Below are positions 1-64,000 of a DNA stretch of 64,000 bases, piece after piece. The notes under the pieces were generated by a model. The model did not search any database. It had not been told where the DNA came from and saw nothing but the letters and a program-made list of their open reading frames with translations. Within the stretch, counting starts at the first letter, position 1. Each line of letters starts with the position of its first letter. Source of the DNA: Auanema rhodensis. Taxonomy: Eukaryota > Animalia > Nematoda. The translations under genes were made by a program, and so were the position numbers. The stretch spans positions 8,432,001 through 8,496,000 of the forward strand of contig OZ059899.1 in assembly GCA_964057225.1 (NCBI GenBank). Reading direction: 5' to 3'.

Positions 1-1320
1 ACGTTGTAGATGTTGTTGTAGATGGAGTTGTGCTCGTTGTTGTAGATGGAGTTGTCGTTGACGTTGTAGATGTCGTTGTGGATGGCGTCGTGCTCGTTGT
101 TGTAGATGGAGTCGTCGTTGACGTTGTAGATGTTGTTGTGGATGGAGTCGTGCTCGTTGTTGTAGATGGAGTCGTCGTTGACGTTGTAGATGTTGTTGTA
201 GATGGAGTCGTGCTCGTTGTTGTAGATGGAGTCGTGCTCGTTGTTGTAGATGGAGTCGTCGTTGACGTTGTAGATGTTGTTGTAGATGGAGTTGTGCTCG
301 TTGTTGTAGATGGAGTCGTCGTTGACGTTGTAGATGTCGTCGTAGATGGAGTCGTGCTCGTTGTTGTAGATGGAGTCGTCGTTGACGTTGTAGATGTTGT
401 TGTGGATGGAGTCGTGCTCGTTGTTGTAGATGGAGTCGTCGTTGACGTTGTAGATGTTGTTGTAGATGGAGTCGTGCTCGTTGTTGTAGATGGAGTTGTC
501 GTTGACGTTGTAGATGTCGTTGTGGATGGCGTCGTCGTTGACGTTGTAGATGTTGTTGTAGATGCAGTTGTGCTCGTTGTTGTAGATGGAGTCGTCGTTG
601 ACGTTGTAGATGTCGTCGTAGATGGAGTTGTGCTCGTTGTTGTAGATGGAGTCGTCGTTGACGTTGTAGATGTTGTTGTAGATGGAGTTGTGCTCGTTGT
701 TGTAGATGGAGTTGTCGTTGACGTTGTAGATGTCGTTGTGGATGGCGTCGTGCTCGTTGTTGTAGATGGAGTCGTCGTTGACGTTGTAGATGTTGTTGTG
801 GATGGAGTCGTGCTCGTTGTTGTAGATGGAGTCGTCGTTGACGTTGTAGATGTTGTTGTAGATGGAGTCGTGCTCGTTGTTGTAGATGGAGTCGTCGTTG
901 ACGTTGTAGATGTTGTTGTAGATGGAGTTGTGGTCGTTGTTGTAGATGGAGTCGTCGTTGACGTTGTAGATGTCGTCGTAGATGGAGTCGTGCTCGTTGT
1001 TGTAGATGGAGTCGTCGTTGACGTTGTAGATGTTGTTGTGGATGGAGTCGTGCTCGTTGTTGTAGATGGAGTCGTCGTTGACGTTGTAGATGTTGTTGTA
1101 GATGGAGTCGTGCTCGTTGTTGTAGATGGAGTTGTCGTTGACGTTGTAGATGTCGTTGTGGATGGCGTCGTCGTTGACGTTGTAGATGTTGTTGTAGATG
1201 CAGTTGTGCTCGTTGTTGTAGATGGAGTCGTCGTTGACGTTGTAGATGTCGTCGTAGATGGAGTTGTGCTCGTTGTTGTAGATGGAGTCGTCGTTGACGT
1301 TGTAGATGTTGTTGTAGATG
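1..1320. repeat. Higher-order duplication, offset 660/636 bp
   Basis: Rare GGC at 84/744 (offset 660) and 528/1164 (636); rare GCA (Pro->Ala) at 564/1200 (636). The change in offset equals one 24-bp A unit. Confidence 0.8.
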
Positions 1321-43300: not shown

Positions 43301-46300
43301 TGTAGATGGTGTCGTCGTTGACGTTGTAGATGTTGTCGTAGATGGAGTCGTGCTCGTTGTTGTAGATGGAGTCGTGCTAGTTGTTGTAGATGGAGTCGTG
43401 CTCGTTGTTGTAGATGGAGTTGTGCTCGTTGTTGTAGATGGAGTCGTCGTTGACGTTGTAGATGTCGTCGTAGATGGAGTCGTGCTCGTTGTTGTAGATG
43501 GAGTCGTGCTCGTTGTTGTAGATGGAGTCGTCGTTGATGTTGTTGATGTTGTTGTAGATGGAGTCGTCGTTGACGTTGTAGATGTTGTTGTAGATGGAGT
43601 CGTGCTCGTCGTTGTAGATGGAGTTGTGCTCGTTGTTGTAGATGGAGTCGTCGTTGACGTTGTAGATGTCGTCGTAGATGGAGTCGTGCTCGTTGTTGTA
43701 GATGGAGTCGTGCTCGTTGTTGTAGATGGAGTCGTCGTTGACGTTGTAGATGTTGTTGTAGATGGAGTCGTCGTTGACGTTGTAGATGTTGTTGTGGATG
43801 GTGTCGTCGTTGACGTTGTTGATGTCGTCGTAGATGGAGTCGTGCTCGTTGTTGTAGATGGAGTCGTCGTTGATGTTGTTAATGTTGTTGTAGATGGAGT
43901 CGTGCTCGTTGTTGTAGATGGAGTCGTCGTTGACGTTGTAGATGTCGTCGTAGATGGAGTCGTGCTCGTTGTTGTAGATGGAGTCGTGCTCGTTGTGGTA
44001 GATGGAGTTGTCGTTGACGTTGTAGATGTTGTTGTGGATGGTGTCGTCGTTGACGTTGTAGATGGAGTCGTGCTCGTTGTTGTAGATGGAGTTGTGCTCG
44101 TTGTTGTAGATGGAGTCGTCGTTGACGTTGTAGATGTCGTCGTAGATGGAGTCGTGCTCGTTGTTGTAGATGGAGTCGTGCTCGTTGTTGTAGATGGAGT
44201 CGTGCTCGTTGTTGTAGATGGAGTTGTCGTTGACGTTGTAGATGTTGTTGTGGATGGTGTCGTCGTTGACGTTGTAGATGTTGTTGTAGATGGAGTTGTG
44301 CTCGTTGTTGTAGATGGAGTCGTCGTTGACGTTGTAGATGTCGTCGTAGATGGAGTCGTGCTCGTTGTTGTAGATGGAGTCGTGCTCGTTGTTGTAGATG
44401 GAGTCGTCGTTGATGTTGTTGATGTTGTTGTAGATGGAGTCGTCGTTGACGTTGTAGATGTTGTTGTAGATGGAGTCGTGCTCGTTGTTGTAGATGGAGT
44501 TGTGCTCGTTGTTGTAGATGGAGTCGTCGTTGACGTTGTAGATGTCGTCGTAGATGGAGTCGTGCTCGTTGTTGTAGATGGAGTCGTGCTCGTTGTTGTA
44601 GATGGAGTCGTCGTTGACGTTGTAGATGTTGTTGTAGATGGAGTCGTCGTTGACGTTGTAGATGTTGTTGTGGATGGTGTCGTCGTTGACGTTGTTGATG
44701 TCGTCGTAGATGGAGTCGTGCTCGTTGTTGTAGATGGAGTCGTCGTTGATGTTGTTGATGTTGTTGTAGATGGAGTCGTGCTCGTTGTTGTAGATGGAGT
44801 CGTCGTTGACGTTGTAGATGTCGTCGTAGATGGAGTCGTGCTCGTTGTTGTAGATGGAGTCGTGCTCGTTGTGGTAGATGGAGTTGTCGTTGACGTTGTA
44901 GATGTTGTTGTGGATGGTGTCGTCGTTGACGTTGTAGATGTTGTTGTGGATGGAGTCGTCGTTGACGTTGTAGATGTTGTTGTAGATGGAGTCGTCGTTG
45001 ACGTTGTAGATGTTGTTGTAGATGGAGTCGTGCTGGTTGTTGTAGATGGAGTTGTGCTCGTTGTTGTAGATGGAGTCGTCGTTGATGTTGTTGATGTTGT
45101 TGTAGATGGAGTCGTCGTTGACGTTGTAGATGTTGTTGTAGATGGAGTTGTGCTCGTTGTTGTAGATGGAGTCGTGCTCGTTGTTGTAGATGGAGTCGTG
45201 CTCGTTGTTGTAGATGGAGTCGTCGTTGATGTTGTTGATGTTGTTGTAGATGGAGTCGTCGTTGACGTTGTAGATGTTGTTGTAGATGGAGTCGTGCTCG
45301 TTGTTGTAGATGGAGTTGTGCTCGTTGTTGTAGATGGAGTCGTCGTTGACGTTGTAGATGTCGTCGTAGATGGAGTCGTGCTCGTTGTTGTAGATGGAGT
45401 CGTGCTCGTTGTTGTAGATGGAGTCGTCGTTGATGTTGTTGATGTTGTTGTAGATGGAGTCGTCGTTGACGTTGTAGATGTTGTTGTAGATGGAGTCGTG
45501 CTCGTTGTTGTAGATGGAGTCGTGCTCGTTGTTGTAGATGGAGTCGTCGTTGATGTTGTTGATGTTGTTGTAGATGGAGTCGTCGTTGACGTTGTAGATG
45601 TTGTTGTAGATGGAGTTGTGCTCGTTGTTGTAGATGGAGTCGTGCTCGTTGTTGTAGATGGAGTCGTGCTCGTTGTTGTAGATGGAGTCGTCGTTGATGT
45701 TGTTGATGTTGTTGTAGATGGAGTCGTCGTTGACGTTGTAGATGTTGTTGTAGATGGAGTCGTGCTCGTTGTTGTAGATGGAGTTGTGCTCGTTGTTGTA
45801 GATGGAGTCGTCGTTGACGTTGTAGATGTCGTCGTAGATGGAGTCGTGCTCGTTGTTGTAGATGGAGTCGTGCTCGTTGTTGTAGATGGAGTCGTCGTTG
45901 ATGTTGTTGATGTTGTTGTAGATGGAGTCGTCGTTGACGTTGTAGATGTTGTTGTAGATGGAGTCGTGCTCGTTGTTGTAGATGGAGTTGTGCTCGTTGT
46001 TGTAGATGGAGTCGTCGTTGACGTTGTAGATGTCGTCGTAGATGGAGTCGTGCTCGTTGTTGTAGATGAAGTCGTGCTCGTTGTTGTAGATGGAGTCGTC
46101 GTTGATGTTGTTGATGTTGTTGTAGATGGAGTCGTCGTTGACGTTGTAGATGTTGTTGTAGATGGAGTTGTGCTCGTTGTTGTAGATGGAGTCGTGCTCG
46201 TCGTTGTAGATGGAGTTGTGCTCGTTGTTGTAGATGGAGTCGTCGTTGACGTTGTAGATGTTGTTGTAGATGGTGTCGTCGTTGACGTTGTAGATGTTGT

Positions 46301-49300
46301 CGTAGATGGAGTCGTGCTCGTTGTTGTAGATGGAGTCGTGCTAGTTGTTGTAGATGGAGTCGTGCTCGTTGTTGTAGATGGAGTCGTCGTTGATGTTGTT
46401 GATGTTGTTGTAGATGGAGTCGTCGTTGACGTTGTAGATGTTGTTGTAGATGGAGTCGTGCTCGTTGTTGTAGATGGAGTTGTGCTCGTTGTTGTAGATG
46501 GAGTCGTCGTTGACGTTGTAGATGTCGTCGTAGATGGAGTCGTGCTCGTTGTTGTAGATGGAGTCGTGCTCGTTGTTGTAGATGGAGTCGTCGTTGACGT
46601 TGTAGATGTTGTTGTAGATGGAGTCGTGCTCGTTGTTGTAGATGGAGTCGTGCTAGTTGTTGTAGATGGAGTCGTGCTCGTTGTTGTAGATGGAGTCGTC
46701 GTTGATGTTGTTGATGTTGTTGTAGATGGAGTCGTCGTTGACGTTGTAGATGTTGTTGTAGATGGAGTCGTGCTCGTTGTTGTAGATGGAGTTGTGCTCG
46801 TTGTTGTAGATGGAGTCGTCGTTGACGTTGTATATGTCGTCGTAGATGGAGTCGTACTCGTTGTTGTAGATGGAGTCGTGCTCGTTGTTGTAGATGGAGT
46901 CGTCGTTGACGTTGTAGATGTTGTTGTAGATGGAGTCGTGCTCGTTGTTGTAGATGGAGTTGTGCTCGTTGTTGTAGATGGAGTCGTCGTTGACGTTGTA
47001 GATGTCGTCGTAGATGGAGTCGTGCTCGTTGTTGTAGATGAAGTCGTGCTCGTTGTTGTAGATGGAGTCGTCGTTGATGTTGTTGATGTTGTTGTAGATG
47101 GAGTCGTCGTTGACGTTGTAGATGTTGTTGTAGATGGAGTTGTGCTCGTTGTTGTAGATGGAGTCGTGCTCGTCGTTGTAGATGGAGTTGTGCTCGTTGT
47201 TGTAGATGGAGTCGTCGTTGACGTTGTAGATGTTGTTGTAGATGGTGTCGTCGTTGACGTTGTAGATGTTGTCGTAGATGGAGTCGTGCTCGTTGTTGTA
47301 GATGGAGTCGTGCTAGTTGTTGTAGATGGAGTCGTGCTCGTTGTTGTAGATGGAGTCGTCGTTGACGTTGTAGATGTCGTCGTAGATGGAGTCGTGCTCG
47401 TTGTTGTAGATGGAGTCGTGCTCGTTGTTGTAGATGGAGTCGTCGTTGATGTTGTTGATGTTGTTGTAGATGGAGTCGTCGTTGACGTTGTAGATGTTGT
47501 TGTAGATGGAGTCGTGCTCGTTGTTGTAGATGGAGTTGTGCTCGTTGTTGTAGATGGAGTCGTCGTTGACGTTGTAGATGTCGTCGTAGATGGAGTCGTG
47601 CTCGTTGTTGTAGATGAAGTCGTGCTCGTTGTTGTAGATGGAGTCGTCGTTGATGTTGTTGATGTTGTTGTAGATGGAGTCGTCGTTGACGTTGTAGATG
47701 TTGTTGTAGATGGAGTTGTGCTCGTTGTTGTAGATGGAGTCGTGCTCGTCGTTGTAGATGGAGTTGTGCTCGTTGTTGTAGATGGAGTCGTCGTTGACGT
47801 TGTAGATGTTGTTGTAGATGGTGTCGTCGTTGACGTTGTAGATGTTGTCGTAGATGGAGTCGTGCTCGTTGTTGTAGATGGTGTCGTCGTTGACGTTGTA
47901 GATGTTGTTGTAGATGGAGTTGTGCTCGTTGTTGTAGATGGAGTCGTCGTTGAAGTTGTAGATGTCGTCGTAGATGGAATCGTGCTCGTTGTTGTAGATG
48001 GAGTCGTCGTTGACGTTGTAGATGTTGTTGTGGATGGTGTCGTCGTTGAGGTTGTAGATGTTGTTGTAGATGGAGTTGTGCTCGTTGTTGTAGATGGAGT
48101 CGTCGTTGACGTTGTAGATGTTGTCGTAGATGGAGTCGTGCTCGTTGTTGTAGATGGAGTCGTGCTCGTTGTTGTAGATGGTGTCGTCGTTGACGTTGTA
48201 GATGTTGTTGTAGATGGTGTCGTCGTTGACGTTGTAGATGTTGTCGTAGATGGAGTCGTGCTCGTTGTTGTAGATGGAGTCGTCGTTGACGTTGTAGATG
48301 TCGTCGTAGATGGAGTCGTGCTCGTTGTTGTAGATGGAGTCGTCGTTGATGTTGTTGATGTTGTTGTAGATGGAGTCGTCGTTGACGTTGTAGATGTTGT
48401 TGTAGATGGAGTTGTGCTCGTTGTTGTAGATGGAGTCGTGCTCGTTGTTGTAGATGGAGTCGTGCTCGTTGTTGTAGATGGAGTCGTCGTTGATGTTGTT
48501 GATGTTGTTGTAGATGGAGTCGTCGTTGACGTTGTAGATGTTGTTGTAGATGGAGTTGTGCTCGTTGTTGTAGATGGAGTCGTGCTCGTCGTTGTAGATG
48601 GAGTTGTGCTCGTTGTTGTAGATGGAGTCGTCGTTGATGTTGTAGATGTTGTTGTAGATGGAGTTGTGCTCGTTGTTGTAGATGGAGTCGTCGTTGACGT
48701 TGTAGATGTTGTCGTAGATGGAGTCGTGCTCGTTGTTGTAGATGGAGTCGTGCTCGTTGTTGTAGATGGTGTCGTCGTTGACGTTGTAGATGTTGTTGTA
48801 GATGGTGTCGTCGTTGACGTTGTAGATGTTGTCGTAGATGGAGTCGTGCTCGTTGTTGTAGATGGAGTCGTCGTTGACGTTGTAGATGTCGTCGTAGATG
48901 GAGTCGTGCTCGTTGTTGTAGATGGAGTCGTCGTTGATGTTGTTGATGTTGTTGTAGATGGAGTCGTCGTTGACGTTGTAGATGTTGTTGTAGATGGAGT
49001 TGTGCTCGTTGTTGTAGATGGAGTCGTGCTCGTTGTTGTAGATGGAGTCGTGCTCGTTGTTGTAGATGGAGTCGTCGTTGATGTTGTTGATGTTGTTGTA
49101 GATGGAGTCGTCGTTGACGTTGTAGATGTTGTTGTAGATGGAGTTGTGCTCGTTGTTGTAGATGGAGTCGTGCTCGTCGTTGTAGATGGAGTTGTGCTCG
49201 TTGTTGTAGATGGAGTCGTCGTTGATGTTGTTGATGTTGTTGTAGATGGAGTCGTCGTTGACGTTGTAGATGTTGTTGTAGATGGAGTTGTGCTCGTTGT

Positions 49301-52300
49301 TGTAGATGGAGTCGTGCTCGTTGTTGTAGATGGAGTCGTGCTCGTTGTTGTAGATGGAGTCGTGCTCGTCGTTGTAGATGGAGTTGTGCTCGTTGTTGTA
49401 GATGGAGTCGTCGTTGACGTTGTAGATGTTGTTGTAGATGGTGTCGTCGTTGACGTTGTAGATGTTGTCGTAGATGGAGTCGTGCTCGTTGTTGTAGATG
49501 GAGTCGTGCTAGTTGTTGTAGATGGAGTCGTGCTCGTTGTTGTAGATGGAGTTGTGCTCGTTGTTGTAGATGGAGTCGTCGTTGACGTTGTAGATGTCGT
49601 CGTAGATGGAGTCGTGCTCGTTGTTGTAGATGGAGTCGTGCTCGTTGTTGTAGATGGAGTCGTCGTTGATGTTGTTGATGTTGTTGTAGATGGAGTCGTC
49701 GTTGACGTTGTAGATGTTGTTGTAGATGGAGTCGTGCTCGTCGTTGTAGATGGAGTTGTGCTCGTTGTTGTAGATGGAGTCGTCGTTGACGTTGTAGATG
49801 TCGTCGTAGATGGAGTCGTGCTCGTTGTTGTAGATGGAGTCGTGCTCGTTGTTGTAGATGGAGTCGTCGTTGACGTTGTAGATGTTGTTGTAGATGGAGT
49901 CGTCGTTGACGTTGTAGATGTTGTTGTGGATGGTGTCGTCGTTGACGTTGTTGATGTCGTCGTAGATGGAGTCGTGCTCGTTGTTGTAGATGGAGTCGTC
50001 GTTGATGTTGTTAATGTTGTTGTAGATGGAGTCGTGCTCGTTGTTGTAGATGGAGTCGTCGTTGACGTTGTAGATGTCGTCGTAGATGGAGTCGTGCTCG
50101 TTGTTGTAGATGGAGTCGTGCTCGTTGTGGTAGATGGAGTTGTCGTTGACGTTGTAGATGTTGTTGTGGATGGTGTCGTCGTTGACGTTGTAGATGGAGT
50201 CGTGCTCGTTGTTGTAGATGGAGTTGTGCTCGTTGTTGTAGATGGAGTCGTCGTTGACGTTGTAGATGTCGTCGTAGATGGAGTCGTGCTCGTTGTTGTA
50301 GATGGAGTCGTGCTCGTTGTTGTAGATGGAGTCGTGCTCGTTGTTGTAGATGGAGTTGTCGTTGACGTTGTAGATGTTGTTGTGGATGGTGTCGTCGTTG
50401 ACGTTGTAGATGTTGTTGTAGATGGAGTTGTGCTCGTTGTTGTAGATGGAGTCGTCGTTGACGTTGTAGATGTCGTCGTAGATGGAGTCGTGCTCGTTGT
50501 TGTAGATGGAGTCGTGCTCGTTGTTGTAGATGGAGTCGTCGTTGATGTTGTTGATGTTGTTGTAGATGGAGTCGTCGTTGACGTTGTAGATGTTGTTGTA
50601 GATGGAGTCGTGCTCGTTGTTGTAGATGGAGTTGTGCTCGTTGTTGTAGATGGAGTCGTCGTTGACGTTGTAGATGTCGTCGTAGATGGAGTCGTGCTCG
50701 TTGTTGTAGATGGAGTCGTGCTCGTTGTTGTAGATGGAGTCGTCGTTGACGTTGTAGATGTTGTTGTAGATGGAGTCGTCGTTGACGTTGTAGATGTTGT
50801 TGTGGATGGTGTCGTCGTTGACGTTGTTGATGTCGTCGTAGATGGAGTCGTGCTCGTTGTTGTAGATGGAGTCGTCGTTGATGTTGTTGATGTTGTTGTA
50901 GATGGAGTCGTGCTCGTTGTTGTAGATGGAGTCGTCGTTGACGTTGTAGATGTCGTCGTAGATGGAGTCGTGCTCGTTGTTGTAGATGGAGTCGTGCTCG
51001 TTGTGGTAGATGGAGTTGTCGTTGACGTTGTAGATGTTGTTGTGGATGGTGTCGTCGTTGACGTTGTAGATGTTGTTGTGGATGGAGTCGTCGTTGACGT
51101 TGTAGATGTTGTTGTAGATGGAGTCGTCGTTGACGTTGTAGATGTTGTTGTAGATGGAGTCGTGCTGGTTGTTGTAGATGGAGTTGTGCTCGTTGTTGTA
51201 GATGGAGTCGTCGTTGATGTTGTTGATGTTGTTGTAGATGGAGTCGTCGTTGACGTTGTAGATGTTGTTGTAGATGGAGTTGTGCTCGTTGTTGTAGATG
51301 GAGTCGTGCTCGTTGTTGTAGATGGAGTCGTGCTCGTTGTTGTAGATGGAGTCGTCGTTGATGTTGTTGATGTTGTTGTAGATGGAGTCGTCGTTGACGT
51401 TGTAGATGTTGTTGTAGATGGAGTCGTGCTCGTTGTTGTAGATGGAGTTGTGCTCGTTGTTGTAGATGGAGTCGTCGTTGACGTTGTAGATGTCGTCGTA
51501 GATGGAGTCGTGCTCGTTGTTGTAGATGGAGTCGTGCTCGTTGTTGTAGATGGAGTCGTCGTTGATGTTGTTGATGTTGTTGTAGATGGAGTCGTCGTTG
51601 ACGTTGTAGATGTTGTTGTAGATGGAGTCGTGCTCGTTGTTGTAGATGGAGTCGTGCTCGTTGTTGTAGATGGAGTCGTCGTTGATGTTGTTGATGTTGT
51701 TGTAGATGGAGTCGTCGTTGACGTTGTAGATGTTGTTGTAGATGGAGTTGTGCTCGTTGTTGTAGATGGAGTCGTGCTCGTTGTTGTAGATGGAGTCGTG
51801 CTCGTTGTTGTAGATGGAGTCGTCGTTGATGTTGTTGATGTTGTTGTAGATGGAGTCGTCGTTGACGTTGTAGATGTTGTTGTAGATGGAGTCGTGCTCG
51901 TTGTTGTAGATGGAGTTGTGCTCGTTGTTGTAGATGGAGTCGTCGTTGACGTTGTAGATGTCGTCGTAGATGGAGTCGTGCTCGTTGTTGTAGATGGAGT
52001 CGTGCTCGTTGTTGTAGATGGAGTCGTCGTTGATGTTGTTGATGTTGTTGTAGATGGAGTCGTCGTTGACGTTGTAGATGTTGTTGTAGATGGAGTCGTG
52101 CTCGTTGTTGTAGATGGAGTTGTGCTCGTTGTTGTAGATGGAGTCGTCGTTGACGTTGTAGATGTCGTCGTAGATGGAGTCGTGCTCGTTGTTGTAGATG
52201 AAGTCGTGCTCGTTGTTGTAGATGGAGTCGTCGTTGATGTTGTTGATGTTGTTGTAGATGGAGTCGTCGTTGACGTTGTAGATGTTGTTGTAGATGGAGT

Positions 52301-55300
52301 TGTGCTCGTTGTTGTAGATGGAGTCGTGCTCGTCGTTGTAGATGGAGTTGTGCTCGTTGTTGTAGATGGAGTCGTCGTTGACGTTGTAGATGTTGTTGTA
52401 GATGGTGTCGTCGTTGACGTTGTAGATGTTGTCGTAGATGGAGTCGTGCTCGTTGTTGTAGATGGAGTCGTGCTAGTTGTTGTAGATGGAGTCGTGCTCG
52501 TTGTTGTAGATGGAGTCGTCGTTGATGTTGTTGATGTTGTTGTAGATGGAGTCGTCGTTGACGTTGTAGATGTTGTTGTAGATGGAGTCGTGCTCGTTGT
52601 TGTAGATGGAGTTGTGCTCGTTGTTGTAGATGGAGTCGTCGTTGACGTTGTAGATGTCGTCGTAGATGGAGTCGTGCTCGTTGTTGTAGATGGAGTCGTG
52701 CTCGTTGTTGTAGATGGAGTCGTCGTTGACGTTGTAGATGTTGTTGTAGATGGAGTCGTGCTCGTTGTTGTAGATGGAGTCGTGCTAGTTGTTGTAGATG
52801 GAGTCGTGCTCGTTGTTGTAGATGGAGTCGTCGTTGATGTTGTTGATGTTGTTGTAGATGGAGTCGTCGTTGACGTTGTAGATGTTGTTGTAGATGGAGT
52901 CGTGCTCGTTGTTGTAGATGGAGTTGTGCTCGTTGTTGTAGATGGAGTCGTCGTTGACGTTGTATATGTCGTCGTAGATGGAGTCGTACTCGTTGTTGTA
53001 GATGGAGTCGTGCTCGTTGTTGTAGATGGAGTCGTCGTTGACGTTGTAGATGTTGTTGTAGATGGAGTCGTGCTCGTTGTTGTAGATGGAGTTGTGCTCG
53101 TTGTTGTAGATGGAGTCGTCGTTGACGTTGTAGATGTCGTCGTAGATGGAGTCGTGCTCGTTGTTGTAGATGAAGTCGTGCTCGTTGTTGTAGATGGAGT
53201 CGTCGTTGATGTTGTTGATGTTGTTGTAGATGGAGTCGTCGTTGACGTTGTAGATGTTGTTGTAGATGGAGTTGTGCTCGTTGTTGTAGATGGAGTCGTG
53301 CTCGTCGTTGTAGATGGAGTTGTGCTCGTTGTTGTAGATGGAGTCGTCGTTGACGTTGTAGATGTTGTTGTAGATGGTGTCGTCGTTGACGTTGTAGATG
53401 TTGTCGTAGATGGAGTCGTGCTCGTTGTTGTAGATGGAGTCGTGCTAGTTGTTGTAGATGGAGTCGTGCTCGTTGTTGTAGATGGAGTCGTCGTTGACGT
53501 TGTAGATGTCGTCGTAGATGGAGTCGTGCTCGTTGTTGTAGATGGAGTCGTGCTCGTTGTTGTAGATGGAGTCGTCGTTGATGTTGTTGATGTTGTTGTA
53601 GATGGAGTCGTCGTTGACGTTGTAGATGTTGTTGTAGATGGAGTCGTGCTCGTTGTTGTAGATGGAGTTGTGCTCGTTGTTGTAGATGGAGTCGTCGTTG
53701 ACGTTGTAGATGTCGTCGTAGATGGAGTCGTGCTCGTTGTTGTAGATGAAGTCGTGCTCGTTGTTGTAGATGGAGTCGTCGTTGATGTTGTTGATGTTGT
53801 TGTAGATGGAGTCGTCGTTGACGTTGTAGATGTTGTTGTAGATGGAGTTGTGCTCGTTGTTGTAGATGGAGTCGTGCTCGTCGTTGTAGATGGAGTTGTG
53901 CTCGTTGTTGTAGATGGAGTCGTCGTTGACGTTGTAGATGTTGTTGTAGATGGTGTCGTCGTTGACGTTGTAGATGTTGTCGTAGATGGAGTCGTGCTCG
54001 TTGTTGTAGATGGTGTCGTCGTTGACGTTGTAGATGTTGTTGTAGATGGAGTTGTGCTCGTTGTTGTAGATGGAGTCGTCGTTGAAGTTGTAGATGTCGT
54101 CGTAGATGGAATCGTGCTCGTTGTTGTAGATGGAGTCGTCGTTGACGTTGTAGATGTTGTTGTGGATGGTGTCGTCGTTGAGGTTGTAGATGTTGTTGTA
54201 GATGGAGTTGTGCTCGTTGTTGTAGATGGAGTCGTCGTTGACGTTGTAGATGTTGTCGTAGATGGAGTCGTGCTCGTTGTTGTAGATGGAGTCGTGCTCG
54301 TTGTTGTAGATGGTGTCGTCGTTGACGTTGTAGATGTTGTTGTAGATGGTGTCGTCGTTGACGTTGTAGATGTTGTCGTAGATGGAGTCGTGCTCGTTGT
54401 TGTAGATGGAGTCGTCGTTGACGTTGTAGATGTCGTCGTAGATGGAGTCGTGCTCGTTGTTGTAGATGGAGTCGTCGTTGATGTTGTTGATGTTGTTGTA
54501 GATGGAGTCGTCGTTGACGTTGTAGATGTTGTTGTAGATGGAGTTGTGCTCGTTGTTGTAGATGGAGTCGTGCTCGTTGTTGTAGATGGAGTCGTGCTCG
54601 TTGTTGTAGATGGAGTCGTCGTTGATGTTGTTGATGTTGTTGTAGATGGAGTCGTCGTTGACGTTGTAGATGTTGTTGTAGATGGAGTTGTGCTCGTTGT
54701 TGTAGATGGAGTCGTGCTCGTCGTTGTAGATGGAGTTGTGCTCGTTGTTGTAGATGGAGTCGTCGTTGATGTTGTAGATGTTGTTGTAGATGGAGTTGTG
54801 CTCGTTGTTGTAGATGGAGTCGTCGTTGACGTTGTAGATGTTGTCGTAGATGGAGTCGTGCTCGTTGTTGTAGATGGAGTCGTGCTCGTTGTTGTAGATG
54901 GTGTCGTCGTTGACGTTGTAGATGTTGTTGTAGATGGTGTCGTCGTTGACGTTGTAGATGTTGTCGTAGATGGAGTCGTGCTCGTTGTTGTAGATGGAGT
55001 CGTCGTTGACGTTGTAGATGTCGTCGTAGATGGAGTCGTGCTCGTTGTTGTAGATGGAGTCGTCGTTGATGTTGTTGATGTTGTTGTAGATGGAGTCGTC
55101 GTTGACGTTGTAGATGTTGTTGTAGATGGAGTTGTGCTCGTTGTTGTAGATGGAGTCGTGCTCGTTGTTGTAGATGGAGTCGTGCTCGTTGTTGTAGATG
55201 GAGTCGTCGTTGATGTTGTTGATGTTGTTGTAGATGGAGTCGTCGTTGACGTTGTAGATGTTGTTGTAGATGGAGTTGTGCTCGTTGTTGTAGATGGAGT

Positions 55301-58300
55301 CGTGCTCGTCGTTGTAGATGGAGTTGTGCTCGTTGTTGTAGATGGAGTCGTCGTTGATGTTGTTGATGTTGTTGTAGATGGAGTCGTCGTTGACGTTGTA
55401 GATGTTGTTGTAGATGGAGTTGTGCTCGTTGTTGTAGATGGAGTCGTGCTCGTTGTTGTAGATGGAGTCGTGCTCGTTGTTGTAGATGGAGTCGTCGTTG
55501 ATGTTGTTGATGTTGTTGTAGATGGAGTCGTCGTTGACGTTGTAGATGTTGTTGTAGATGGAGTCGTGCTCGTTGTTGTAGATGGAGTTGTGCTCGTTGT
55601 TGTAGATGGAGTCGTCGTTGACGTTGTAGATGTCGTCGTAGATGGAGTCGTGCTCGTTGTTGTAGATGGAGTCGTGCTCGTTGTTGTAGATGGAGTCGTC
55701 GTTGATGTTGTTGATGTTGTTGTAGATGGAGTCGTCGTTGACGTTGTAGATGTTGTTGTAGATGGAGTCGTGCTCGTTGTTGTAGATGGAGTTGTGCTCG
55801 TTGTTGTAGATGGAGTCGTCGTTGACGTTGTAGATGTCGTCGTAGATGGAGTCGTGCTCGTTGTTGTAGATGAAGTCGTGCTCGTTGTTGTAGATGGAGT
55901 CGTCGTTGATGTTGTTGATGTTGTTGTAGATGGAGTCGTCGTTGACGTTGTAGATGTTGTTGTAGATGGAGTTGTGCTCGTTGTTGTAGATGGAGTCGTG
56001 CTCGTCGTTGTAGATGGAGTTGTGCTCGTTGTTGTAGATGGAGTCGTCGTTGACGTTGTAGATGTTGTTGTAGATGGTGTCGTCGTTGACGTTGTAGATG
56101 TTGTCGTAGATGGAGTCGTGCTCGTTGTTGTAGATGGAGTCGTGCTAGTTGTTGTAGATGGAGTCGTGCTCGTTGTTGTAGATGGAGTCGTCGTTGATGT
56201 TGTTGATGTTGTTGTAGATGGAGTCGTCGTTGACGTTGTAGATGTTGTTGTAGATGGAGTCGTGCTCGTTGTTGTAGATGGAGTTGTGCTCGTTGTTGTA
56301 GATGGAGTCGTCGTTGACGTTGTAGATGTCGTCGTAGATGGAGTCGTGCTCGTTGTTGTAGATGGAGTCGTGCTCGTTGTTGTAGATGGAGTCGTCGTTG
56401 ACGTTGTAGATGTTGTTGTAGATGGAGTCGTGCTCGTTGTTGTAGATGGAGTCGTGCTAGTTGTTGTAGATGGAGTCGTGCTCGTTGTTGTAGATGGAGT
56501 CGTCGTTGATGTTGTTGATGTTGTTGTAGATGGAGTCGTCGTTGACGTTGTAGATGTTGTTGTAGATGGAGTCGTGCTCGTTGTTGTAGATGGAGTTGTG
56601 CTCGTTGTTGTAGATGGAGTCGTCGTTGACGTTGTATATGTCGTCGTAGATGGAGTCGTGCTCGTTGTTGTAGATGGAGTCGTGCTCGTTGTTGTAGATG
56701 GAGTCGTCGTTGACGTTGTAGATGTTGTTGTAGATGGAGTCGTGCTCGTTGTTGTAGATGGAGTTGTGCTCGTTGTTGTAGATGGAGTCGTCGTTGACGT
56801 TGTAGATGTCGTCGTAGATGGAGTCGTGCTCGTTGTTGTAGATGAAGTCGTGCTCGTTGTTGTAGATGGAGTCGTCGTTGATGTTGTTGATGTTGTTGTA
56901 GATGGAGTCGTCGTTGACGTTGTAGATGTTGTTGTAGATGGAGTTGTGCTCGTTGTTGTAGATGGAGTCTTGCTCGTCGTTGTAGATGGAGTTGTGCTCG
57001 TTGTTGTAGATGGAGTCGTCGTTGACGTTGTAGATGTTGTTGTAGATGGTGTCGTCGTTGACGTTGTAGATGTTGTCGTAGATGGAGTCGTGCTCGTTGT
57101 TGTAGATGGAGTCGTGCTAGTTGTTGTAGATGGAGTCGTGCTCGTTGTTGTAGATGGAGTCGTCGTTGATGTTGTTGATGTTGTTGTAGATGGAGTCGTC
57201 GTTGACGTTGTAGATGTTGTTGTAGATGGAGTCGTGCTCGTTGTTGTAGATGGAGTTGTGCTCGTTGTTGTAGATGGAGTCGTCGTTGACGTTGTAGATG
57301 TCGTCGTAGATGGAGTCGTGCTCGTTGTTGTAGATGGAGTCGTGCTCGTTGTTGTAGATGGAGTCGTCGTTGATGTTGTTGATGTTGTTGTAGATGGAGT
57401 CGTCGTTGACGTTGTAGATGTTGTTGTAGATGGAGTCGTGCTCGTTGTTGTAGATGGAGTTGTGCTCGTTGTTGTAGATGGAGTCGTCGTTGACGTTGTA
57501 GATGTCGTCGTAGATGGAGTCGTGCTCGTTGTTGTAGATGAAGTCGTGCTCGTTGTTGTAGATGGAGTCGTCGTTGATGTTGTTGATGTTGTTGTAGATG
57601 GAGTCGTCGTTGACGTTGTAGATGTTGTTGTAGATGGAGTTGTGCTCGTTGTTGTAGATGGAGTCGTGCTCGTCGTTGTAGATGGAGTTGTGCTCGTTGT
57701 TGTAGATGGAGTCGTCGTTGACGTTGTAGATGTTGTTGTAGATGGTGTCGTCGTTGACGTTGTAGATGTTGTCGTAGATGGAGTCGTGCTCGTTGTTGTA
57801 GATGGTGTCGTCGTTGACGTTGTAGATGTTGTTGTAGATGGAGTTGTGCTCGTTGTTGTAGATGGAGTCGTCGTTGAAGTTGTAGATGTCGTCGTAGATG
57901 GAGTCGTGCTCGTTGTTGTAGATGGAGTCGTCGTTGACGTTTTAGATGTTGTTGTGGATGGTGTCGTCGTTGAGGTTGTAGATGTTGTTGTAGATGGAGT
58001 TGTGCTCGTTGTTGTAGATGGAGTCGTCGTTGACGTTGTAGATGTTGTCGTAGATGGAGTCGTGCTCGTTGTTGTAGATGGAGTCGTGCTCGTTGTTGTA
58101 GATGGTGTCGTCGTTGACGTTGTAGATGTTGTTGTAGATGGTGTCGTCGTTGACGTTGTAGATGTTGTCGTAGATGGAGTCGTGCTCGTTGTTGTAGATG
58201 GAGTCGTCGTTGACGTTGTAGATGTCGTCGTAGATGGAGTCGTGCTCGTTGTTGTAGATGGAGTCGTCGTTGACGTTGTAGACGTTGTTGTGGATGGTGT

Positions 58301-61300: not shown

Positions 61301-64000
61301 TGGAGTCGTCGTTGATGTTGTTGATGTTGTTGTAGATGGAGTCGTCGTTGACGTTGTAGATGTTGTTGTAGATGGAGTCGTGCTCGTTGTTGTAGATGGA
61401 GTTGTGCTCGTTGTTGTAGATGGAGTCGTCGTTGACGTTGTAGATGTCGTCGTAGATGGAGTCGTGCTCGTTGTTGTAGATGGAGTCGTGCTCGTTGTTG
61501 TAGATGGAGTTGTGCTCGTTGTTGTAGATGGAGTCGTCGTTGACGTTGTAGATGTCGTCGTAGATGGAGTCGTGCTCGTTGTTGTAGATGGAGTCGTGCT
61601 CGTTGTTGTAGATGGAGTCGTCGTTGATGTTGTTGATGTTGTTGTAGATGGAGTCGTCGTTGACGTTGTAGATGTTGTTGTAGATGGAGTCGTGCTCGTT
61701 GTTGTAGATGGAGTCGTGCTCGTTGTTGTAGATGGAGTCGTCGTTGATGTTGTTGATGTTGTTGTAGATGGAGTCGTCGTTGACGTTGTAGATGTTGTTG
61801 TAGATGGAGTTGTGCTCGTTGTTGTAGATGGAGTCGTGCTCGTTGTTGTAGATGGAGTTGTGCTCGTTGTTGTAGATGGAGTCGTCGTTGACGTTGTAGA
61901 TGTTGTTGTAGATGGTGTCGTCGTTGACGTTGTAGATGTTGTCGTAGATGGAGTCGTGCTCGTTGTTGTAGATGGAGTCGTTGTTGACGTTGTAGATGTT
62001 GTTGTAGATGGTGTCGTCGTTGACGTTGTAGATGTTGTCGTAGATGGAGTCGTGCTCGTTGTTGTAGATGGAGTCGTCGTTGACGTTGTAGATGGAGTCG
62101 TGCTCGTTGTTGTAGATGGTGTCGTCGTTGACGTTGTAGATGTTGTTGTAGATGGAGTTGTGCTCGTTGTTGTAGATGGGGTCGTCGTTGACGTTGTAGA
62201 TGTCGTCGTAGATGGAGTCGTGCTCGTTGTTGTAGATGGTGTCGTCGTTGACGTTGTAGATGTTGTTGTAGATGTCGTCGTAGATGGAGTCGTGCTCGTT
62301 GTTGTAGATGGAGTCGTGCTCGTTGTTGTAGATGGAGTCGTCGTTGATGTTGTTGATGTTGTTGTAGATGGAGTCGTCGTTGACGTTGTAGATGTTGTTG
62401 TAGATGGAGTCGTGCTCGTTGTTGTAGATGGAGTCGTGCTCGTTGTTGTAGATGGAGTCGTCGTTGATGTTGTTGATGTTGTTGTAGATGGAGTCGTCGT
62501 TGACGTTGTAGATGTCGTCGTAGATGGAGTCGTGCTCGTTGTTGTAGATGGAGTCGTGCTCGTTGTTGTAGATGGAGTCGTCGTTGATGTTGTTGATGTT
62601 GTTGTAGATGGAGTCGTCGTTGACGTTGTAGATGTTGTTGTAGATGGAGTTGTGCTCGTCGTTGTAGATGGAGTCGTGCTCGTTGTTGTAGATGAAGTCG
62701 TGCTCGTTGTTGTAGATGGAGTCGTCGTTGATGTTGTTGATGTTGTTGTAGATGGAGTCGTCGTTGACGTTGTAGATGTTGTTGTAGATGGAGTCGTGCT
62801 CGTTGTTGTAGATGGAGTTGTGCTCGTTGTTGTAGATGGAGTCGTCGTTGACGTTGTAGATGTCGTCGTAGATGGAGTCGTGCTCGTTGTTGTAGATGGA
62901 GTCGGGCTCGTTGTTGTAGATGGAGTCGTCGTTGATGTTGTTGATGTTGTTGTAGATGGAGTCGTCGTTGACGTTGTAGATGTTGTTGTAGATGGAGTCG
63001 TGCTCGTTGTTGTAGATGGAGTTGTGCTCGTTGTTGTAGATGGAGTCGTCGTTGACGTTGTAGATGTCGTCGTAGATGGAGTCGTGCTCGTTGTTGTAGA
63101 TGAAGTCGTGCTCGTTGTTGTAGATGGAGTCGTCGTTGATGTTGTTGATGTTGTTGTAGATGGAGTCGTCGTTGACGTTGTAGATGTTGTTGTAGATGGA
63201 GTTGTGCTCGTTGTTGTAGATGGAGTCGTGCTCGTCGTTGTAGATGGAGTTGTGCTCGTTGTTGTAGATGGAGTCGTCGTTGACGTTGTAGATGTTGTTG
63301 TAGATGGTGTCGTCGTTGACGTTGTAGATGTTGTCGTAGATGGAGTCGTGCTCGTTGTTGTAGATGGAGTCGTGCTAGTTGTTGTAGATGGAGTCGTGCT
63401 CGTTGTTGTAGATGGAGTCGTCGTTGACGTTGTAGATGTCGTCGTAGATGGAGTCGTGCTCGTTGTTGTAGATGGAGTCGTCGTTGAAGTTGTAGATGTC
63501 GTCGTAGATGGAGTCGTGCTCGTTGTTGTAGATGGAGTCGTCGTTGACGTTGTAGATGTTGTTGTGGATGGTGTCGTCGTTGACGTTGTAGATGTTGTTG
63601 TAGATGGAGTTGTGCTCGTTGTTGTAGATGGAGTCGTCGTTGACGTTGTAGATGTTGTCGTAGATGGAGTCGTGCTCGTTGTTGTAGATGGAGTCGTGCT
63701 CGTTGTTGTAGATGGAGTCGTCGTTGACGTTGTAGATGTTGTTGTGGATGGTGTCGTCGTTGACGTTGTAGATGTTGTTGTAGATGGAGTTGTGCTCGTT
63801 GTTGTAGATGGAGTCGTCGTTGACGTTGTAGATGTTGTCGTAGATGGAGTCGTGCTCGTTGTTGTAGATGGAGTCGTGCTCGTTGTTGTAGATGGTGTCG
63901 TCGTTGACGTTGTAGATGTTGTCGTATATGGAGTCGTGCTCGTTGTTGTAGATGGAGTCGTCGTTGACGTTGTAGATGTCGTCGTAGATGGAGTCGTGCT
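2..64000 (-). CDS. Partial (open at both ends) giant mucin-like Thr/Ser/Pro-rich tandem-repeat (PTS) coding region, at least 21,333 codons; repeats PSTTTSTT and PSTTTSTTSTTT
   Basis: The reverse complement of + triplets starting at positions 2 mod 3 gives almost only ACN (Thr), TCN/AGC (Ser) and CCA (Pro). I saw no + strand TTA/CTA/TCA triplet in this phase, i.e. no stop. Every 60-bp line up to 60961 starts in the same 12-bp register, so there is no net frameshift; the only register change (61014-61025) is +6 bp. Common variants hit the wobble base. No start, stop or non-repeat domain lies in the window, so the product call rests on composition alone. Confidence 0.8.
1620..6930. repeat. Higher-order duplications, offsets 1392 bp and 1860 bp (three related copies)
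   Basis: Marker GTTCTT (C at 2703/4095/5955), marker TTCTAG (C at 2958/4350/6210), GAA at 1650/3042 and 2544/3936. Confidence 0.85.
18700..23600. repeat. Overlapping higher-order duplications, offsets 2340, 756 and 2556 bp
   Basis: Linked GGC...GTTATA...GACATT cassette with GGC at 18867, 21207 and 21963; CCT at 20492/23048 and CTT at 20961/23517 (offset 2556). Confidence 0.8.
28350..33990. repeat. Nested higher-order duplications, offsets 1908 bp and 4416 bp
   Basis: GAGGGA at 30141/32049, GTCGTAGAT in an A unit at 30651/32559, and hybrid GGT-GTCGTGCTC at 29391/31299 (all 1908). CCT at 28748/33164 and GTTCTT C at 28935/33351 (4416). Confidence 0.85.
36700..44950. repeat. ~3.9-kb tandem duplication (offset 3840 -> 3900 -> 3876 bp)
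   Basis: GTAGTAGATG at 37491/41391, GAA at 39228/43104, AAT at 40005/43881, truncated B unit at 40161/44037. The offset steps correspond to a 60-bp gain (~40921-41040) and a 24-bp loss (~41790). Confidence 0.85.
43206..55495. repeat. 6132-bp (2044-codon) apparently perfect tandem duplication
   Basis: Rare markers all at offset 6132: AAT 43881/50013, truncated B 44037/50169, TGCTGG 45031/51163, TATATG 46831/52963, GTCGTACT 46851/52983, AAT of GGAATC 47978/54110. The flanking mismatches are at 43205/49337 and 49364/55496. Confidence 0.9.
59150..64000. repeat. Diverged duplication, offset 3138 bp (~59.15-60.86 kb vs ~62.29-64.0 kb)
   Basis: GTTGTGCTCGTCGTT at 59511/62649 and GAA at 60348/63486; the end of the window (63961) matches 60823. 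The offset is not a multiple of 12 because the 6-bp insertion at ~61017 lies between the copies. Confidence 0.8.

What the first reader, a model, noticed from the sequence alone, without database searches (positions are those of the whole stretch)
2..64000. Uninterrupted >=64-kb reading frame: a >=21,333-aa (~2 MDa) Thr/Ser/Pro domain, candidate giant mucin-like protein
Seen: one minus-strand frame is open across the entire window and encodes only PSTTTSTT / PSTTTSTTSTTT with rare substitutions; there is no intron, linker or Cys-containing domain. Known: PTS domains of gel-forming and membrane mucins are O-GalNAc-glycosylated and usually lie in one large exon (e.g. the MUC5AC 8-aa TTSTTSAP repeat). 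Well-known very large coding exons such as those of MUC16 and TTN are on the order of 20 kb, and MUC5AC/MUC5B PTS regions are interrupted by CysD domains. Inference: if transcribed unspliced, this is about three times that exon scale and still unbounded. The repeat alone would approach titin size, with about 90% hydroxyl residues (~19,000 potential O-glycosylation sites), and could form a micrometre-scale bottle-brush for mucus, glue, cuticle or surface coat.
Basis: partly seen in the sequence, partly recalled or inferred. Interest (0 to 1): 0.85.

Follow-up and report, generated by a model that had tools for sequence, protein, structure and literature searches.

The report
Giant 100-kb-exon nematode mucin
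The window is the middle of one 99.6-kb coding exon of a roundworm gene for a secreted, sugar-coat (mucin-like) protein of about 34,000 residues, as long as the muscle giant titin, whose 3' end is shown by RNA to be spliced to thrombospondin-type adhesion modules.

Summary
Observation confirmed and enlarged. The minus-strand frame has no stop in the window (21,333 codons, 99.7% Thr/Ser/Pro). In the genome (G000:C7) it stays open for 33,228 codons.

The exon is 99,643 nt (C7:8403173-8502815). It holds about 1,540 PSTTTSTT and 1,520 PSTTTSTTSTTT units. It is coding, not satellite:
- There is no frameshift.
- Variation lies almost only at third codon positions.
- Every internal duplication offset listed is a multiple of 3.
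- A paralog on contig C6 has an 8.6-kb exon with the same two peptides in different codons.

Upstream lie a signal-peptide exon and a six-Cys domain, joined in phase by inferred splice sites. Downstream, RNA contigs from two runs of one study splice the exon's 3' end through 17 GT..AG introns. These exons encode nine thrombospondin type-1 repeats, then a stop and AATAAA.

The predicted protein is about 34,100 aa, with 3.2 MDa from the repeat alone. Uncharacterised relatives occur across rhabditid nematodes, with far shorter or unresolved arrays.

Not shown: array length by long reads, one continuous transcript, translation, glycosylation and tissue. An earlier scan note on the adjacent window (s1-387504) saw the same gene's 3' end.

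The parts
1..64000 (-). Window part of the giant exon, roughly its codons 2,271 to 23,604. Pure PSTTTSTT / PSTTTSTTSTTT repeat. The whole exon is G000:C7:8403173-8502815 (window -28827 to 70815 if extrapolated): 99,643 nt and 33,213 full codons, T 64.6%, S 25.1%, P 9.8%, 3.23 MDa.
   Evidence: The 3' boundary comes from RNA joints. The 5' boundary comes from an inferred acceptor, ttttag|TA.
43206..55495 (-). Youngest part of the array: an exact tandem duplication. A 6,158-nt block recurs at an offset of 6,132 nt (2,044 codons).
37890..44863 (-). Second exact internal duplication: a 3,098-nt block at an offset of 3,876 nt (1,292 codons).
1..60 (-). Pointer to the parts that lie beyond the window's start (the gene's 3' side). 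The exon runs on for 28,828 nt to C7:8403173, and its last 42 full codons are TSR 1. Then come 17 small exons (C7:8400084-8403126, about 757 aa) encoding TSRs 2 to 9 with eight four-Cys linkers. The stop TAA is at C7:8400086-84, AATAAA at C7:8400063-68, and the RNA contigs end at C7:8400058-61.
   Evidence: RNA joints; frame check; TSR profile against PDB; 3' end.
63941..64000 (-). Pointer to the parts that lie beyond the window's end (the gene's 5' side). The exon runs on for 6,815 nt to C7:8502815. An inferred 44-nt intron follows at C7:8502816-8502859. Two exons of a six-Cys N-domain lie at C7:8502860-8502986 and 8503029-8503222. The first coding exon has its ATG at C7:8503807 and encodes MKIWLGSLVILQVFITLALSQ (signal peptide).
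   Evidence: Inferred from sequence, without RNA support. The N-domain has no Pfam or PDB relative.

Best explanation
The window is the interior of a real protein-coding exon of 99,643 nt on the minus strand of a nematode chromosome.

The gene encodes a secreted protein of about 34,100 residues with this layout:
- a signal peptide;
- a six-Cys N-terminal domain of about 110 aa;
- 33,213 codons of PSTTTSTT / PSTTTSTTSTTT, 89.7% Ser+Thr with Pro every 8 or 12 residues;
- nine thrombospondin type-1 repeats (TSRs) interleaved with four-Cys linkers;
- no transmembrane or lipid-anchor tail.

Shown here: the sequence features and the splicing of the 3' end.

Inferred: the Thr/Ser/Pro tract is densely O-glycosylated in the Golgi and becomes a stiff bottle-brush about 8 um long. 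The TSR tail, and perhaps the N-domain, fasten it to extracellular matrix or to other copies. The result would be a hydrated, protease-resistant surface or lumen coat.

The array grew by nested in-frame segmental duplications of 0.5 to 6 kb. Selection held the peptide fixed while synonymous sites drifted.
For: Frame and exon:
- Zero stops in the window and 33,228 open codons in the genome.
- Unit census: 1,537 and 1,521 exact copies of the two peptides.
- Differences from the unit consensus: 45, 83 and 3,161 at codon positions 1, 2 and 3. That is 3,131 synonymous against 127 non-synonymous codon differences.
- The 15 commonest internal duplication offsets are all multiples of 3. The centre of the array is homogenised and its edges are diverged.

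Assembly:
- Every 8-kb stretch of the array is unique. The longest exact repeat is 6,158 nt, so accurate long reads can resolve it.

Paralog:
- A full paralog lies at C6:4579.9-4592.3 kb. It has a similar N-domain Cys pattern, an 8.6-kb exon and collinear TSR exons.
- Its unit consensus differs at 12 third positions plus a TCT to AGC serine switch, yet the peptide is 60/60 identical. The antisense frame changes to 53/59.

RNA:
- Contigs of 2,556 and 2,592 nt from runs X10 and X12 lie on C7:8400058-8403466.
- They carry intron-sized skips of 42-68 nt whose ends read CT..AC on the + strand, that is GT..AG on the minus strand.
- They end inside the giant exon's 3' part. DNA run X2 has the unspliced form.
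- All 17 introns keep the frame up to the TAA, which is followed by AATAAA.

Processing signals:
- The coding strand of the exon has no TCAG, no GTAAG, GTGAG or GTATG, and no AATAAA or ATTAAA in 99.6 kb. It therefore offers no ordinary site for internal splicing or early polyadenylation.

TSR identity:
- A profile of the gene's own exons hits properdin (8e-13), thrombospondin-1 (6e-8) and UNC5B.
- Relatives pass the Pfam TSP_1 threshold at 46-67 bits against a cut-off of 21.6.
- A Cooperia oncophora protein is collinear at 42-63% identity.

N-terminus:
- Signal peptide and in-phase 5' introns.
Against: - Its 99.6-kb length therefore rests on the assembly alone.
- RNA support is short-read contigs from one study. 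It covers only the last roughly 290 nt of the exon uniquely. Repeat-derived RNA contigs fit several places in the array.
- The 5' splice model has no RNA support.
- The V/D/G/L antisense frame is equally open and shares the wobble position, so third-position variation does not pick the strand. Only the flanking exons and the paralog do.
- The copies are not independent events, so the 25:1 synonymous ratio overstates the number of mutations.
- There is no evidence of translation, glycosylation or tissue.
- Pfam on single exons gave only sub-threshold TSP1_CFP_C hits.
Confidence: 0.8

Rival explanations
1. The gene is real, but the array length is an assembly artefact or a property of one individual. 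The true exon would be much shorter, like the 8.6-kb paralog.
For: - Tandem arrays are the classic site of assembly error.
- Relatives and the paralog have arrays of about 1 to 11 kb.
- DNA run X2 shows a small 'goes back' joint in the array.
- No read-level check of the length was possible.
Against: - All 8-kb stretches are unique, and the array has an irregular, regionally differentiated order of units.
- Assemblers usually collapse such arrays rather than expand them.
- The array sits in a 21.5-Mb contig without N.
- The own-genome search turned up no second copy or haplotig.
Confidence: 0.1
2. The exon is transcribed, but the giant protein is never made whole. Internal processing, early termination, ribosome drop-off or cleavage would yield much smaller products.
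For: - No full-length transcript or protein was shown.
- A message of about 102 kb that is 65% Thr codons is demanding to make and translate.
- Short-read RNA contigs cannot show continuity.
Against: - The exon has no consensus splice or poly(A) signals in 99.6 kb.
- The frame is kept perfectly over the whole length, which is hard to explain unless all of it is translated.
- The 3' end of the exon is joined to the tail exons in RNA.
Confidence: 0.12
3. The stretch is a non-coding satellite, or a dead gene, that is open only because its unit has no stop.
For: - Two of the six frames are open by construction.
- Only 1.4% of single-base substitutions would make a stop.
Against: - No frameshift in 99.6 kb, and in-frame duplication offsets.
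- Peptide identity with a paralog despite synonymous divergence.
- In-phase spliced flanks with a signal peptide and TSRs, supported by RNA at the 3' end.
Confidence: 0.02
4. The plus-strand V/D/G/L frame (33,193 open codons) is the coding one.
For: It is equally stop-free and shares the wobble position.
Against: - It has no flanking exons or start.
- The splice joints are GT..AG on the minus strand only.
- The peptide changes between paralogs, with D to L and D to E.
Confidence: 0.01

Closest known systems
Uncharacterised nematode TSR-tailed mucin-like proteins. Examples: Cooperia oncophora KAK6055772.1 ('thrombospondin type 1 domain protein, partial'), Strongyloides papillosus A0A0N5C1A9 ('Scaffoldin'), Rhabditophanes A0AC35UDM1, Pristionchus entomophagus GMS79559.1, and this genome's own paralog on C6.
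   Same: - The C-terminal run of TSRs with CCP..G.WSEW heads and CCPGY..CGP linkers is collinear at 42-63% identity.
- A Thr-rich repeat array sits directly upstream.
- S. papillosus has Cys-patterned N-terminal domains.
   Different: - Array size: about 350 aa in S. papillosus, at least 3,078 aa in P. entomophagus, 2,880 aa in the paralog, and 33,213 aa here.
- The repeat peptides differ: TTSEELTTIETS, ITSTTEEPTTTV and TVPTSTTT elsewhere.
- No member has a studied function.
Vertebrate mucins with one giant VNTR exon: MUC12, MUC16, MUC4, MUC5AC.
   Same: - A secreted protein whose bulk is a Pro/Thr/Ser tandem repeat in one exon.
- Growth by in-frame repeat expansion.
   Different: - No VWD/C8/TIL/CTCK, SEA, EGF or TM domains; the ends are a novel six-Cys domain and TSRs.
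- The exon is about 1.4 times the longest human MUC12 allele of 23,080 aa (PMC13345508).
- No sequence homology outside composition.
SCO-spondin (Reissner fibre glycoprotein), properdin and thrombospondin-1 TSRs.
   Same: - Tandem TSRs with WxxW and Cys layers.
- The gene's own TSR profile hits properdin and thrombospondin-1 in the PDB.
- Mollusc proteins named 'SCO-spondin-like' appear among the hits.
   Different: - No VWD, LDLa, EMI or CTCK domains.
- The TSRs carry extra Cys (TCGxCG) and a four-Cys linker.
- The bulk of the protein is mucin, not TSR.
Titin and PKZILLA-1/-2 (size comparison only).
   Same: - The length and polypeptide mass class are similar: about 34,100 aa and about 3.3 MDa here.
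- PKZILLA-1 is 45,212 aa and 4.7 MDa, about 25% larger than titin; PKZILLA-2 is 3.2 MDa (10.1101/2024.01.29.577497).
   Different: - PKZILLA-1 and -2 are multi-exon genes (17 and 12 exons) encoding enzyme domains; titin is a folded-domain muscle protein.
- Here about 97% of the protein is one low-complexity exon.
Nematode surface and plug mucins: Toxocara TES-120/MUC-1..5 and C. elegans PLG-1 (from my own knowledge).
   Same: - Secreted nematode Ser/Thr-rich glycoproteins flanked by small Cys domains.
- Some hits of this family are labelled ShKT-domain proteins.
   Different: - Those proteins are hundreds to a few thousand residues long and have ShK/SXC or no TSR domains.
- Homology was not tested.

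Membership tests
Mucin (functional class: secreted or membrane protein with a PTS tandem-repeat domain) | Long tandem-repeat domain rich in Pro/Thr/Ser, encoded in one exon | tested here: met
   33,213 codons, 99.5% T/S/P, in one stop-free exon.
Mucin (functional class) | Entry into the secretory pathway (signal peptide) | tested here: met
   MKIWLGSLVILQVFITLALSQ was read directly from the sequence and joins in phase to the N-domain exon. No signal-peptide predictor was available, and the 5' splice has no RNA support.
Mucin (functional class) | Dense O-GalNAc glycosylation of the PTS domain | not testable with these tools
   Needs glycoproteomics or lectin/mucinase assays.
Gel-forming mucins (MUC2/5AC/5B/6/19 type) | VWD-C8-TIL assemblies at the N-terminus, CysD in the repeat, CTCK at the C-terminus | tested here: not met
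   Pfam on the flanking exons gives only weak TSP1_CFP_C. No Cys lies inside the array. The tail is TSRs.
Membrane mucins (MUC1/4/12/16 type) | SEA or NIDO/AMOP/VWD module plus a transmembrane helix | tested here: not met
   The C-terminus ends ...CCPGYTRKIVSGKIVCV with no hydrophobic stretch. No SEA hit.
Thrombospondin type-1 repeat (TSR) superfamily | WxxW layer, a Cys pair around T-C-G, an Arg layer, and significant profile similarity to known TSRs | tested here: met
   An alignment of eight of the gene's own exons shows the consensus CCPxxGxWSEW...CxDTCGSCG..T..R.C...GCxC. The profile hits properdin at 8e-13, thrombospondin-1 at 6e-8 and UNC5B at 1.4e-6. Relatives pass Pfam PF00090. Single exons alone stay below the Pfam threshold.
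Nematode TSR-tailed mucin-like family (uncharacterised) | Collinear C-terminal series of TSR plus four-Cys linker modules preceded by a Thr-rich array | tested here: met
   phmmer: 80 hits at E <= 1e-3, the best at 1.3e-64 with 8 stretches. tblastn collinearity with KAK6055772.1. Upstream arrays in P. entomophagus and Cooperia contigs.
SCO-spondin | EMI, VWD, LDLa, TIL and CTCK domains together with TSRs | tested here: not met
   None of these domains was found in the flanking exons or in four family members scanned over their whole length.
Non-coding satellite DNA | No constraint on frame: indels of any length and substitutions spread over all codon positions | tested here: not met

The most novel reading that the evidence does not exclude
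The whole 99.6-kb exon is transcribed and translated as one polypeptide of about 34,100 aa (about 3.3 MDa before sugars). To my knowledge this would be the longest continuous coding exon and the largest mucin yet described, and one of the largest animal proteins. Once glycosylated, a single molecule would span about 8 um, several cell diameters of the worm. It would act as an end-anchored tether or coat whose length has itself been selected: a tenfold expansion over the paralog and relatives with the peptide held fixed.
Probability: 0.55. Interest if true: 0.8.

Novelty: new variant of a known kind. Interest (0 to 1): 0.7.

Why it matters
- It would set an upper mark for exon size and for mucin size. 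It shows that splicing, transcription and translation can handle a 100-kb exon that is 65% Thr codons in a small animal.
- It defines a nematode-wide, unstudied family of TSR-tailed mucins. Members occur in parasites (Cooperia, Necator, Strongyloides) and in free-living species. None was found among the 30 hits whose source names were looked up from C. elegans.
- The paralog pair (8.6 kb against 99.6 kb, same peptides, different codons) is a clean natural experiment on selection for repeat sequence versus repeat number.
- Such genes are invisible or truncated in short-read assemblies. The Cooperia model, for example, is 'partial' and starts at the array.
- If the product is a surface or lumen coat, it is relevant to host-parasite interfaces.

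Tried and rejected
- Pfam on ten single exons gave only sub-threshold TSP1_CFP_C and nothing for the N-domain.
- PDB sequence search with the two N-domain exons found nothing.
- BLAST of the N-domain exons against the paralog and all fetched relatives gave only E of about 0.05 to 5. Homology of the N-domain therefore rests on a similar Cys pattern alone.
- The own-genome search with the N-domain exon found only itself.
- A 56-codon open stretch (RREATIRH...) between exon 1 and the N-domain exon was considered as an exon and rejected. It cannot be joined in frame.
- The antisense V/D/G/L frame was rejected.
- Literature searches for a giant nematode mucin or a TSR-mucin found nothing relevant.
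- Look-ups of contigs for Necator P0010, P. mayeri P0021 and Logan P0015 did not add array sizes.
- The species was not identified, because names are coded or withheld. An earlier scan note and the best hits say rhabditid nematode.
- Read depth cannot give copy number, because contig depths are summed.
- Frames across introns were checked only inside scripts, exon by exon.
Those parts are now given as pointers at the window's two ends.


Full report
**Observation.** Six-frame translation of the window shows no stop in the minus-strand frame that starts at position 64000. Its 21,333 codons comprise 13,786 Thr, 5,361 Ser, 2,124 Pro and 62 others. The + strand frame 2 (Val/Asp/Gly/Leu) is also stop-free. 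The other two minus frames have only 17 and 33 stops. A tandem repeat whose unit has no stop is open by construction, so the open frame alone proves little. Tandem Repeats Finder reports periods of 24, 60 and 204 nt across the whole window.

**Extent.** The window is G000:C7:8432001-8496000 in a 181-Mb assembly of 112 contigs. I fetched 40 kb on each side.
- The G+T-rich, 47% GC array runs from about 8403 to 8503 kb. The flanks have 31% GC.
- The T/S/P frame is open stop-to-stop for 33,228 codons, from C7:8502855 down to 8403172.
- With the splice sites below, the exon is C7:8403173-8502815. That is 99,643 nt and 33,213 full codons: 64.6% Thr, 25.1% Ser, 9.8% Pro, 29,794 hydroxyl residues and 3.23 MDa.
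- The window covers roughly codons 2,271 to 23,604.

**Anatomy of the array.**
- It consists of 1,537 exact PSTTTSTT units, 1,521 exact PSTTTSTTSTTT units and about 200 variant units. Only 106 residues inside it are not T, S or P.
- The 8-mers and 12-mers follow no simple period.
- Each unit type has its own codon signature.
- Against the unit consensus there are 45, 83 and 3,161 differences at codon positions 1, 2 and 3. That is 3,131 synonymous against 127 non-synonymous codon differences.
- About half of all 301-mers have an exact second copy. The 15 commonest offsets (6,132, 3,876, 1,908, 564, 1,392 and so on) are all multiples of 3.
- Exact duplicates are dense at 8468-8488 kb and rare at both edges. 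Unit-variant frequencies shift along the array. This is the usual picture of a real array that grows by nested unequal exchange.
- The longest exact repeat is 6,158 nt, and every 8-kb stretch is unique. Accurate long reads should therefore assemble it.

**Which strand?** The wobble position of the T/S/P frame is also the wobble position of the antisense V/D/G/L frame. Third-position variation therefore cannot choose between them. Three other lines do.

1. *The ends of the frame.*
- At its 3' end the T/S/P frame runs straight from the repeat into ...CCPKNGLWSEWLAEGECSSPCGSCAQQTLRRRCVSEESGCSC.
- At its 5' end a 44-nt intron (gtaaaac...attttag) joins it in phase to an exon ending ...ENKFICD.

2. 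*A paralog at C6:4579.9-4592.3 kb.* It has the same layout: a similarly Cys-patterned N-domain, one 8.6-kb exon (2,880 open codons) and collinear TSR exons at 44-64% identity.
- Its exon encodes the same two peptides with different codons. The consensus units differ at 12 third positions and by a TCT to AGC serine switch.
- The T/S/P peptide is 60/60 identical. The antisense peptide changes to 53/59, with D to L and D to E.
- The flanking domains have diverged to about 50% identity while the repeat peptide is unchanged. Selection therefore acts on the T/S/P reading.

3. *RNA.* Runs X10 and X12 come from one study and are labelled only as probable RNA.
- They contain contigs of 2,556 and 2,592 nt that lie on C7:8400058-8403466.
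- They carry intron-sized skips of 42-68 nt whose ends read CT..AC on the + strand, which is GT..AG on the minus strand.
- DNA run X2 has the unspliced sequence and none of the joints.
- The contigs end 260-290 nt inside the giant exon, where the repeat begins.
- The same RNA runs also contain repeat contigs at least 95% identical to the array. Those fit several places, so they cannot be positioned.

**Gene model, 3' side.** Using 15 listed joints and two that I derived from contig arithmetic, all 17 introns (40-68 nt) keep the frame.
- The tail after the repeat is about 757 aa. It holds nine WxxW...C..(T/P)CGxCG...R.C...GCxC modules, the first still inside the giant exon, alternating with eight C...C..P...CC...CGP linkers.
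- It ends ...KIVCV-TAA at C7:8400086-84 without a hydrophobic tail.
- AATAAA follows about 15 nt later, and the RNA contigs stop about 5 nt after that.

**Are the modules TSRs?**
- Single exons reach only sub-threshold TSP1_CFP_C scores in Pfam.
- A profile of eight of the gene's own exons hits properdin (8e-13), thrombospondin-1 TSRs (6e-8, 1e-7), UNC5B and BAI1 in the PDB.
- Relatives scanned whole pass Pfam TSP_1 at 46-67 bits against a cut-off of 21.6.

**Gene model, 5' side (inferred, no RNA).**
- An ATG at C7:8503807 opens MKIWLGSLVILQVFITLALSQ, a typical signal peptide. A ttgtcag acceptor-like site lies 19 nt upstream of it.
- Two canonical GT..AG joins connect this exon in frame to the first N-domain exon.
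- The N-domain spans two exons of 64 and 42 codons with six Cys. It has no relative in Pfam or the PDB. It is only faintly similar to the paralog's N-domain beyond a comparable Cys pattern.
- Total predicted length is about 34,100 aa.

**Will it be processed as one exon?** The coding strand of the exon contains no TCAG (so no nematode UUUCAG acceptor). It contains no GTAAG, GTGAG or GTATG, and no AATAAA or ATTAAA, in 99.6 kb. This fits an unspliced, non-terminated passage. Continuity of the transcript was not shown.

**Relatives.** A phmmer search with one TSR exon against 1.84 billion representatives gave 80 proteins at E <= 1e-3.
- Of the 30 whose source names were looked up, 26 have a named source. 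Of those, 23 come from rhabditid nematodes: Cooperia, Necator, Strongyloides, Rhabditophanes, Steinernema, Pristionchus, Caenorhabditis auriculariae and sp. 36, Panagrolaimus, Acrobeloides, Ditylenchus, Halicephalobus, Auanema and Mesorhabditis.
- The other three are 'SCO-spondin-like' or related TSR proteins of molluscs and a sponge. None is characterised, and none was from C. elegans.
- The Cooperia protein (808 aa, 'partial') is collinear with the tail at 42-63% identity. Its 18.7-kb contig has a TVPTSTTT array at its start, about 1.3 kb upstream of the gene model.
- The Pristionchus entomophagus member lies on a 35.8-Mb contig. Upstream of it is an ITSTTEEPTTTV array open for at least 3,078 codons and called as a 3,655-aa gene.
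- Strongyloides papillosus has about 350 aa of TTSEELTTIETS-type repeats.
- The architecture is therefore old, the repeat peptide turns over, and the 33,213-codon array here is about ten times the largest relative seen.

**Mechanism.**

Shown: a secretory leader, a PTS array, a TSR tail, no membrane anchor, and a 3' splice confirmed by RNA.

Inferred from general knowledge of mucins and TSRs:
- The array is O-glycosylated at a large share of its 29,794 Ser/Thr residues.
- It becomes a stiff bottle-brush about 8 um long, taking 0.25 nm per residue.
- The nine TSRs, whose WxxW motifs are typical C-mannosylation sites, bind matrix or other copies.
- The molecule then forms a hydrated coat or tether on a surface or in a lumen. 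The tissue is unknown.

**Rivals.** The main ones are an inflated array length (0.1) and a product that is never made whole (0.12). A non-coding satellite and the antisense frame are effectively excluded.

**Comparison and novelty.**
- It works like a mucin but lacks the domains that define vertebrate gel-forming or membrane mucins. It is a member of the TSR superfamily and of an unnamed nematode family.
- The longest human MUC12 allele encodes 23,080 aa and is called the largest exon of the human genome (PMC13345508).
- PKZILLA-1 has 45,212 aa in 17 exons and is about 25% larger than titin (10.1101/2024.01.29.577497).
- This exon therefore exceeds the mucin record by about 1.4 times. That makes the protein roughly titin-sized.
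- I rate it a new variant of a known kind, extreme in scale and with an undescribed architecture.

Noticed in passing
G000:C6:4579962-4592279 (+); loci L020-L022: Full paralog of the giant gene. It has a similarly Cys-patterned N-domain, an 8.6-kb PTS exon (2,880 open codons) with the same two peptides in different codons, and collinear TSR exons.
   Followed up: yes
G000:C6:4576522-4577157 (+); L020: Directly upstream of the paralog lies an open frame of 17-aa repeats, VGGNVGGNTGKNPS(V/I)PS, flanked by small Cys-rich exons. It looks like a different repeat protein.
   Followed up: no
G000:C5:13964393-13966708 (-); L023: Two PTS exons of PSTTTT six-residue repeats separated by Cys-containing linkers. 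This is a smaller, unrelated-looking mucin-like gene that shares DNA similarity with the array.
   Followed up: partly
G000:C4:16961652-16962842 (+); L024: A cluster of TSR plus four-Cys-linker exons of the same module type. No large PTS exon lies within the 10 kb fetched.
   Followed up: partly
C7:8503335-8503502 (-), 7.3-7.5 kb beyond the window's end: A 56-codon stop-free stretch (RREATIRHLTAEFNKLHG...) lies inside the inferred first intron. It cannot be joined in frame to the N-domain exon. It may be chance or an alternative exon.
   Followed up: partly
L017:484-681 (C7:8399784-8399981): A 2,333-nt RNA contig of run X10 ends about 80 nt from the mucin's poly(A) site. It was laid in the opposite contig orientation to the mucin transcript contig, which shows no strand. 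It is probably a closely abutting neighbour transcript.
   Followed up: no
L017:4830-4868 (C7:8404130-8404168): DNA run X2 (coded organism B) shows a 'goes back' joint with 9 extra letters inside the array. This is either array polymorphism between isolates or a tangle in the short-read contig graph.
   Followed up: no
L025:2-9235 (Pristionchus entomophagus BTSX01000001.1): A family member in another nematode has an ITSTTEEPTTTV array of at least 3,078 codons upstream of its TSR exons. The array is annotated as a separate 3,655-aa gene, so the public gene model is probably split.
   Followed up: partly
C7:8524752-8525126 (-): An open frame containing a run of about 35 Lys codons (a long A-run) lies in the let-413/Scribble region beyond the window. 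This is simple-sequence DNA.
   Followed up: no
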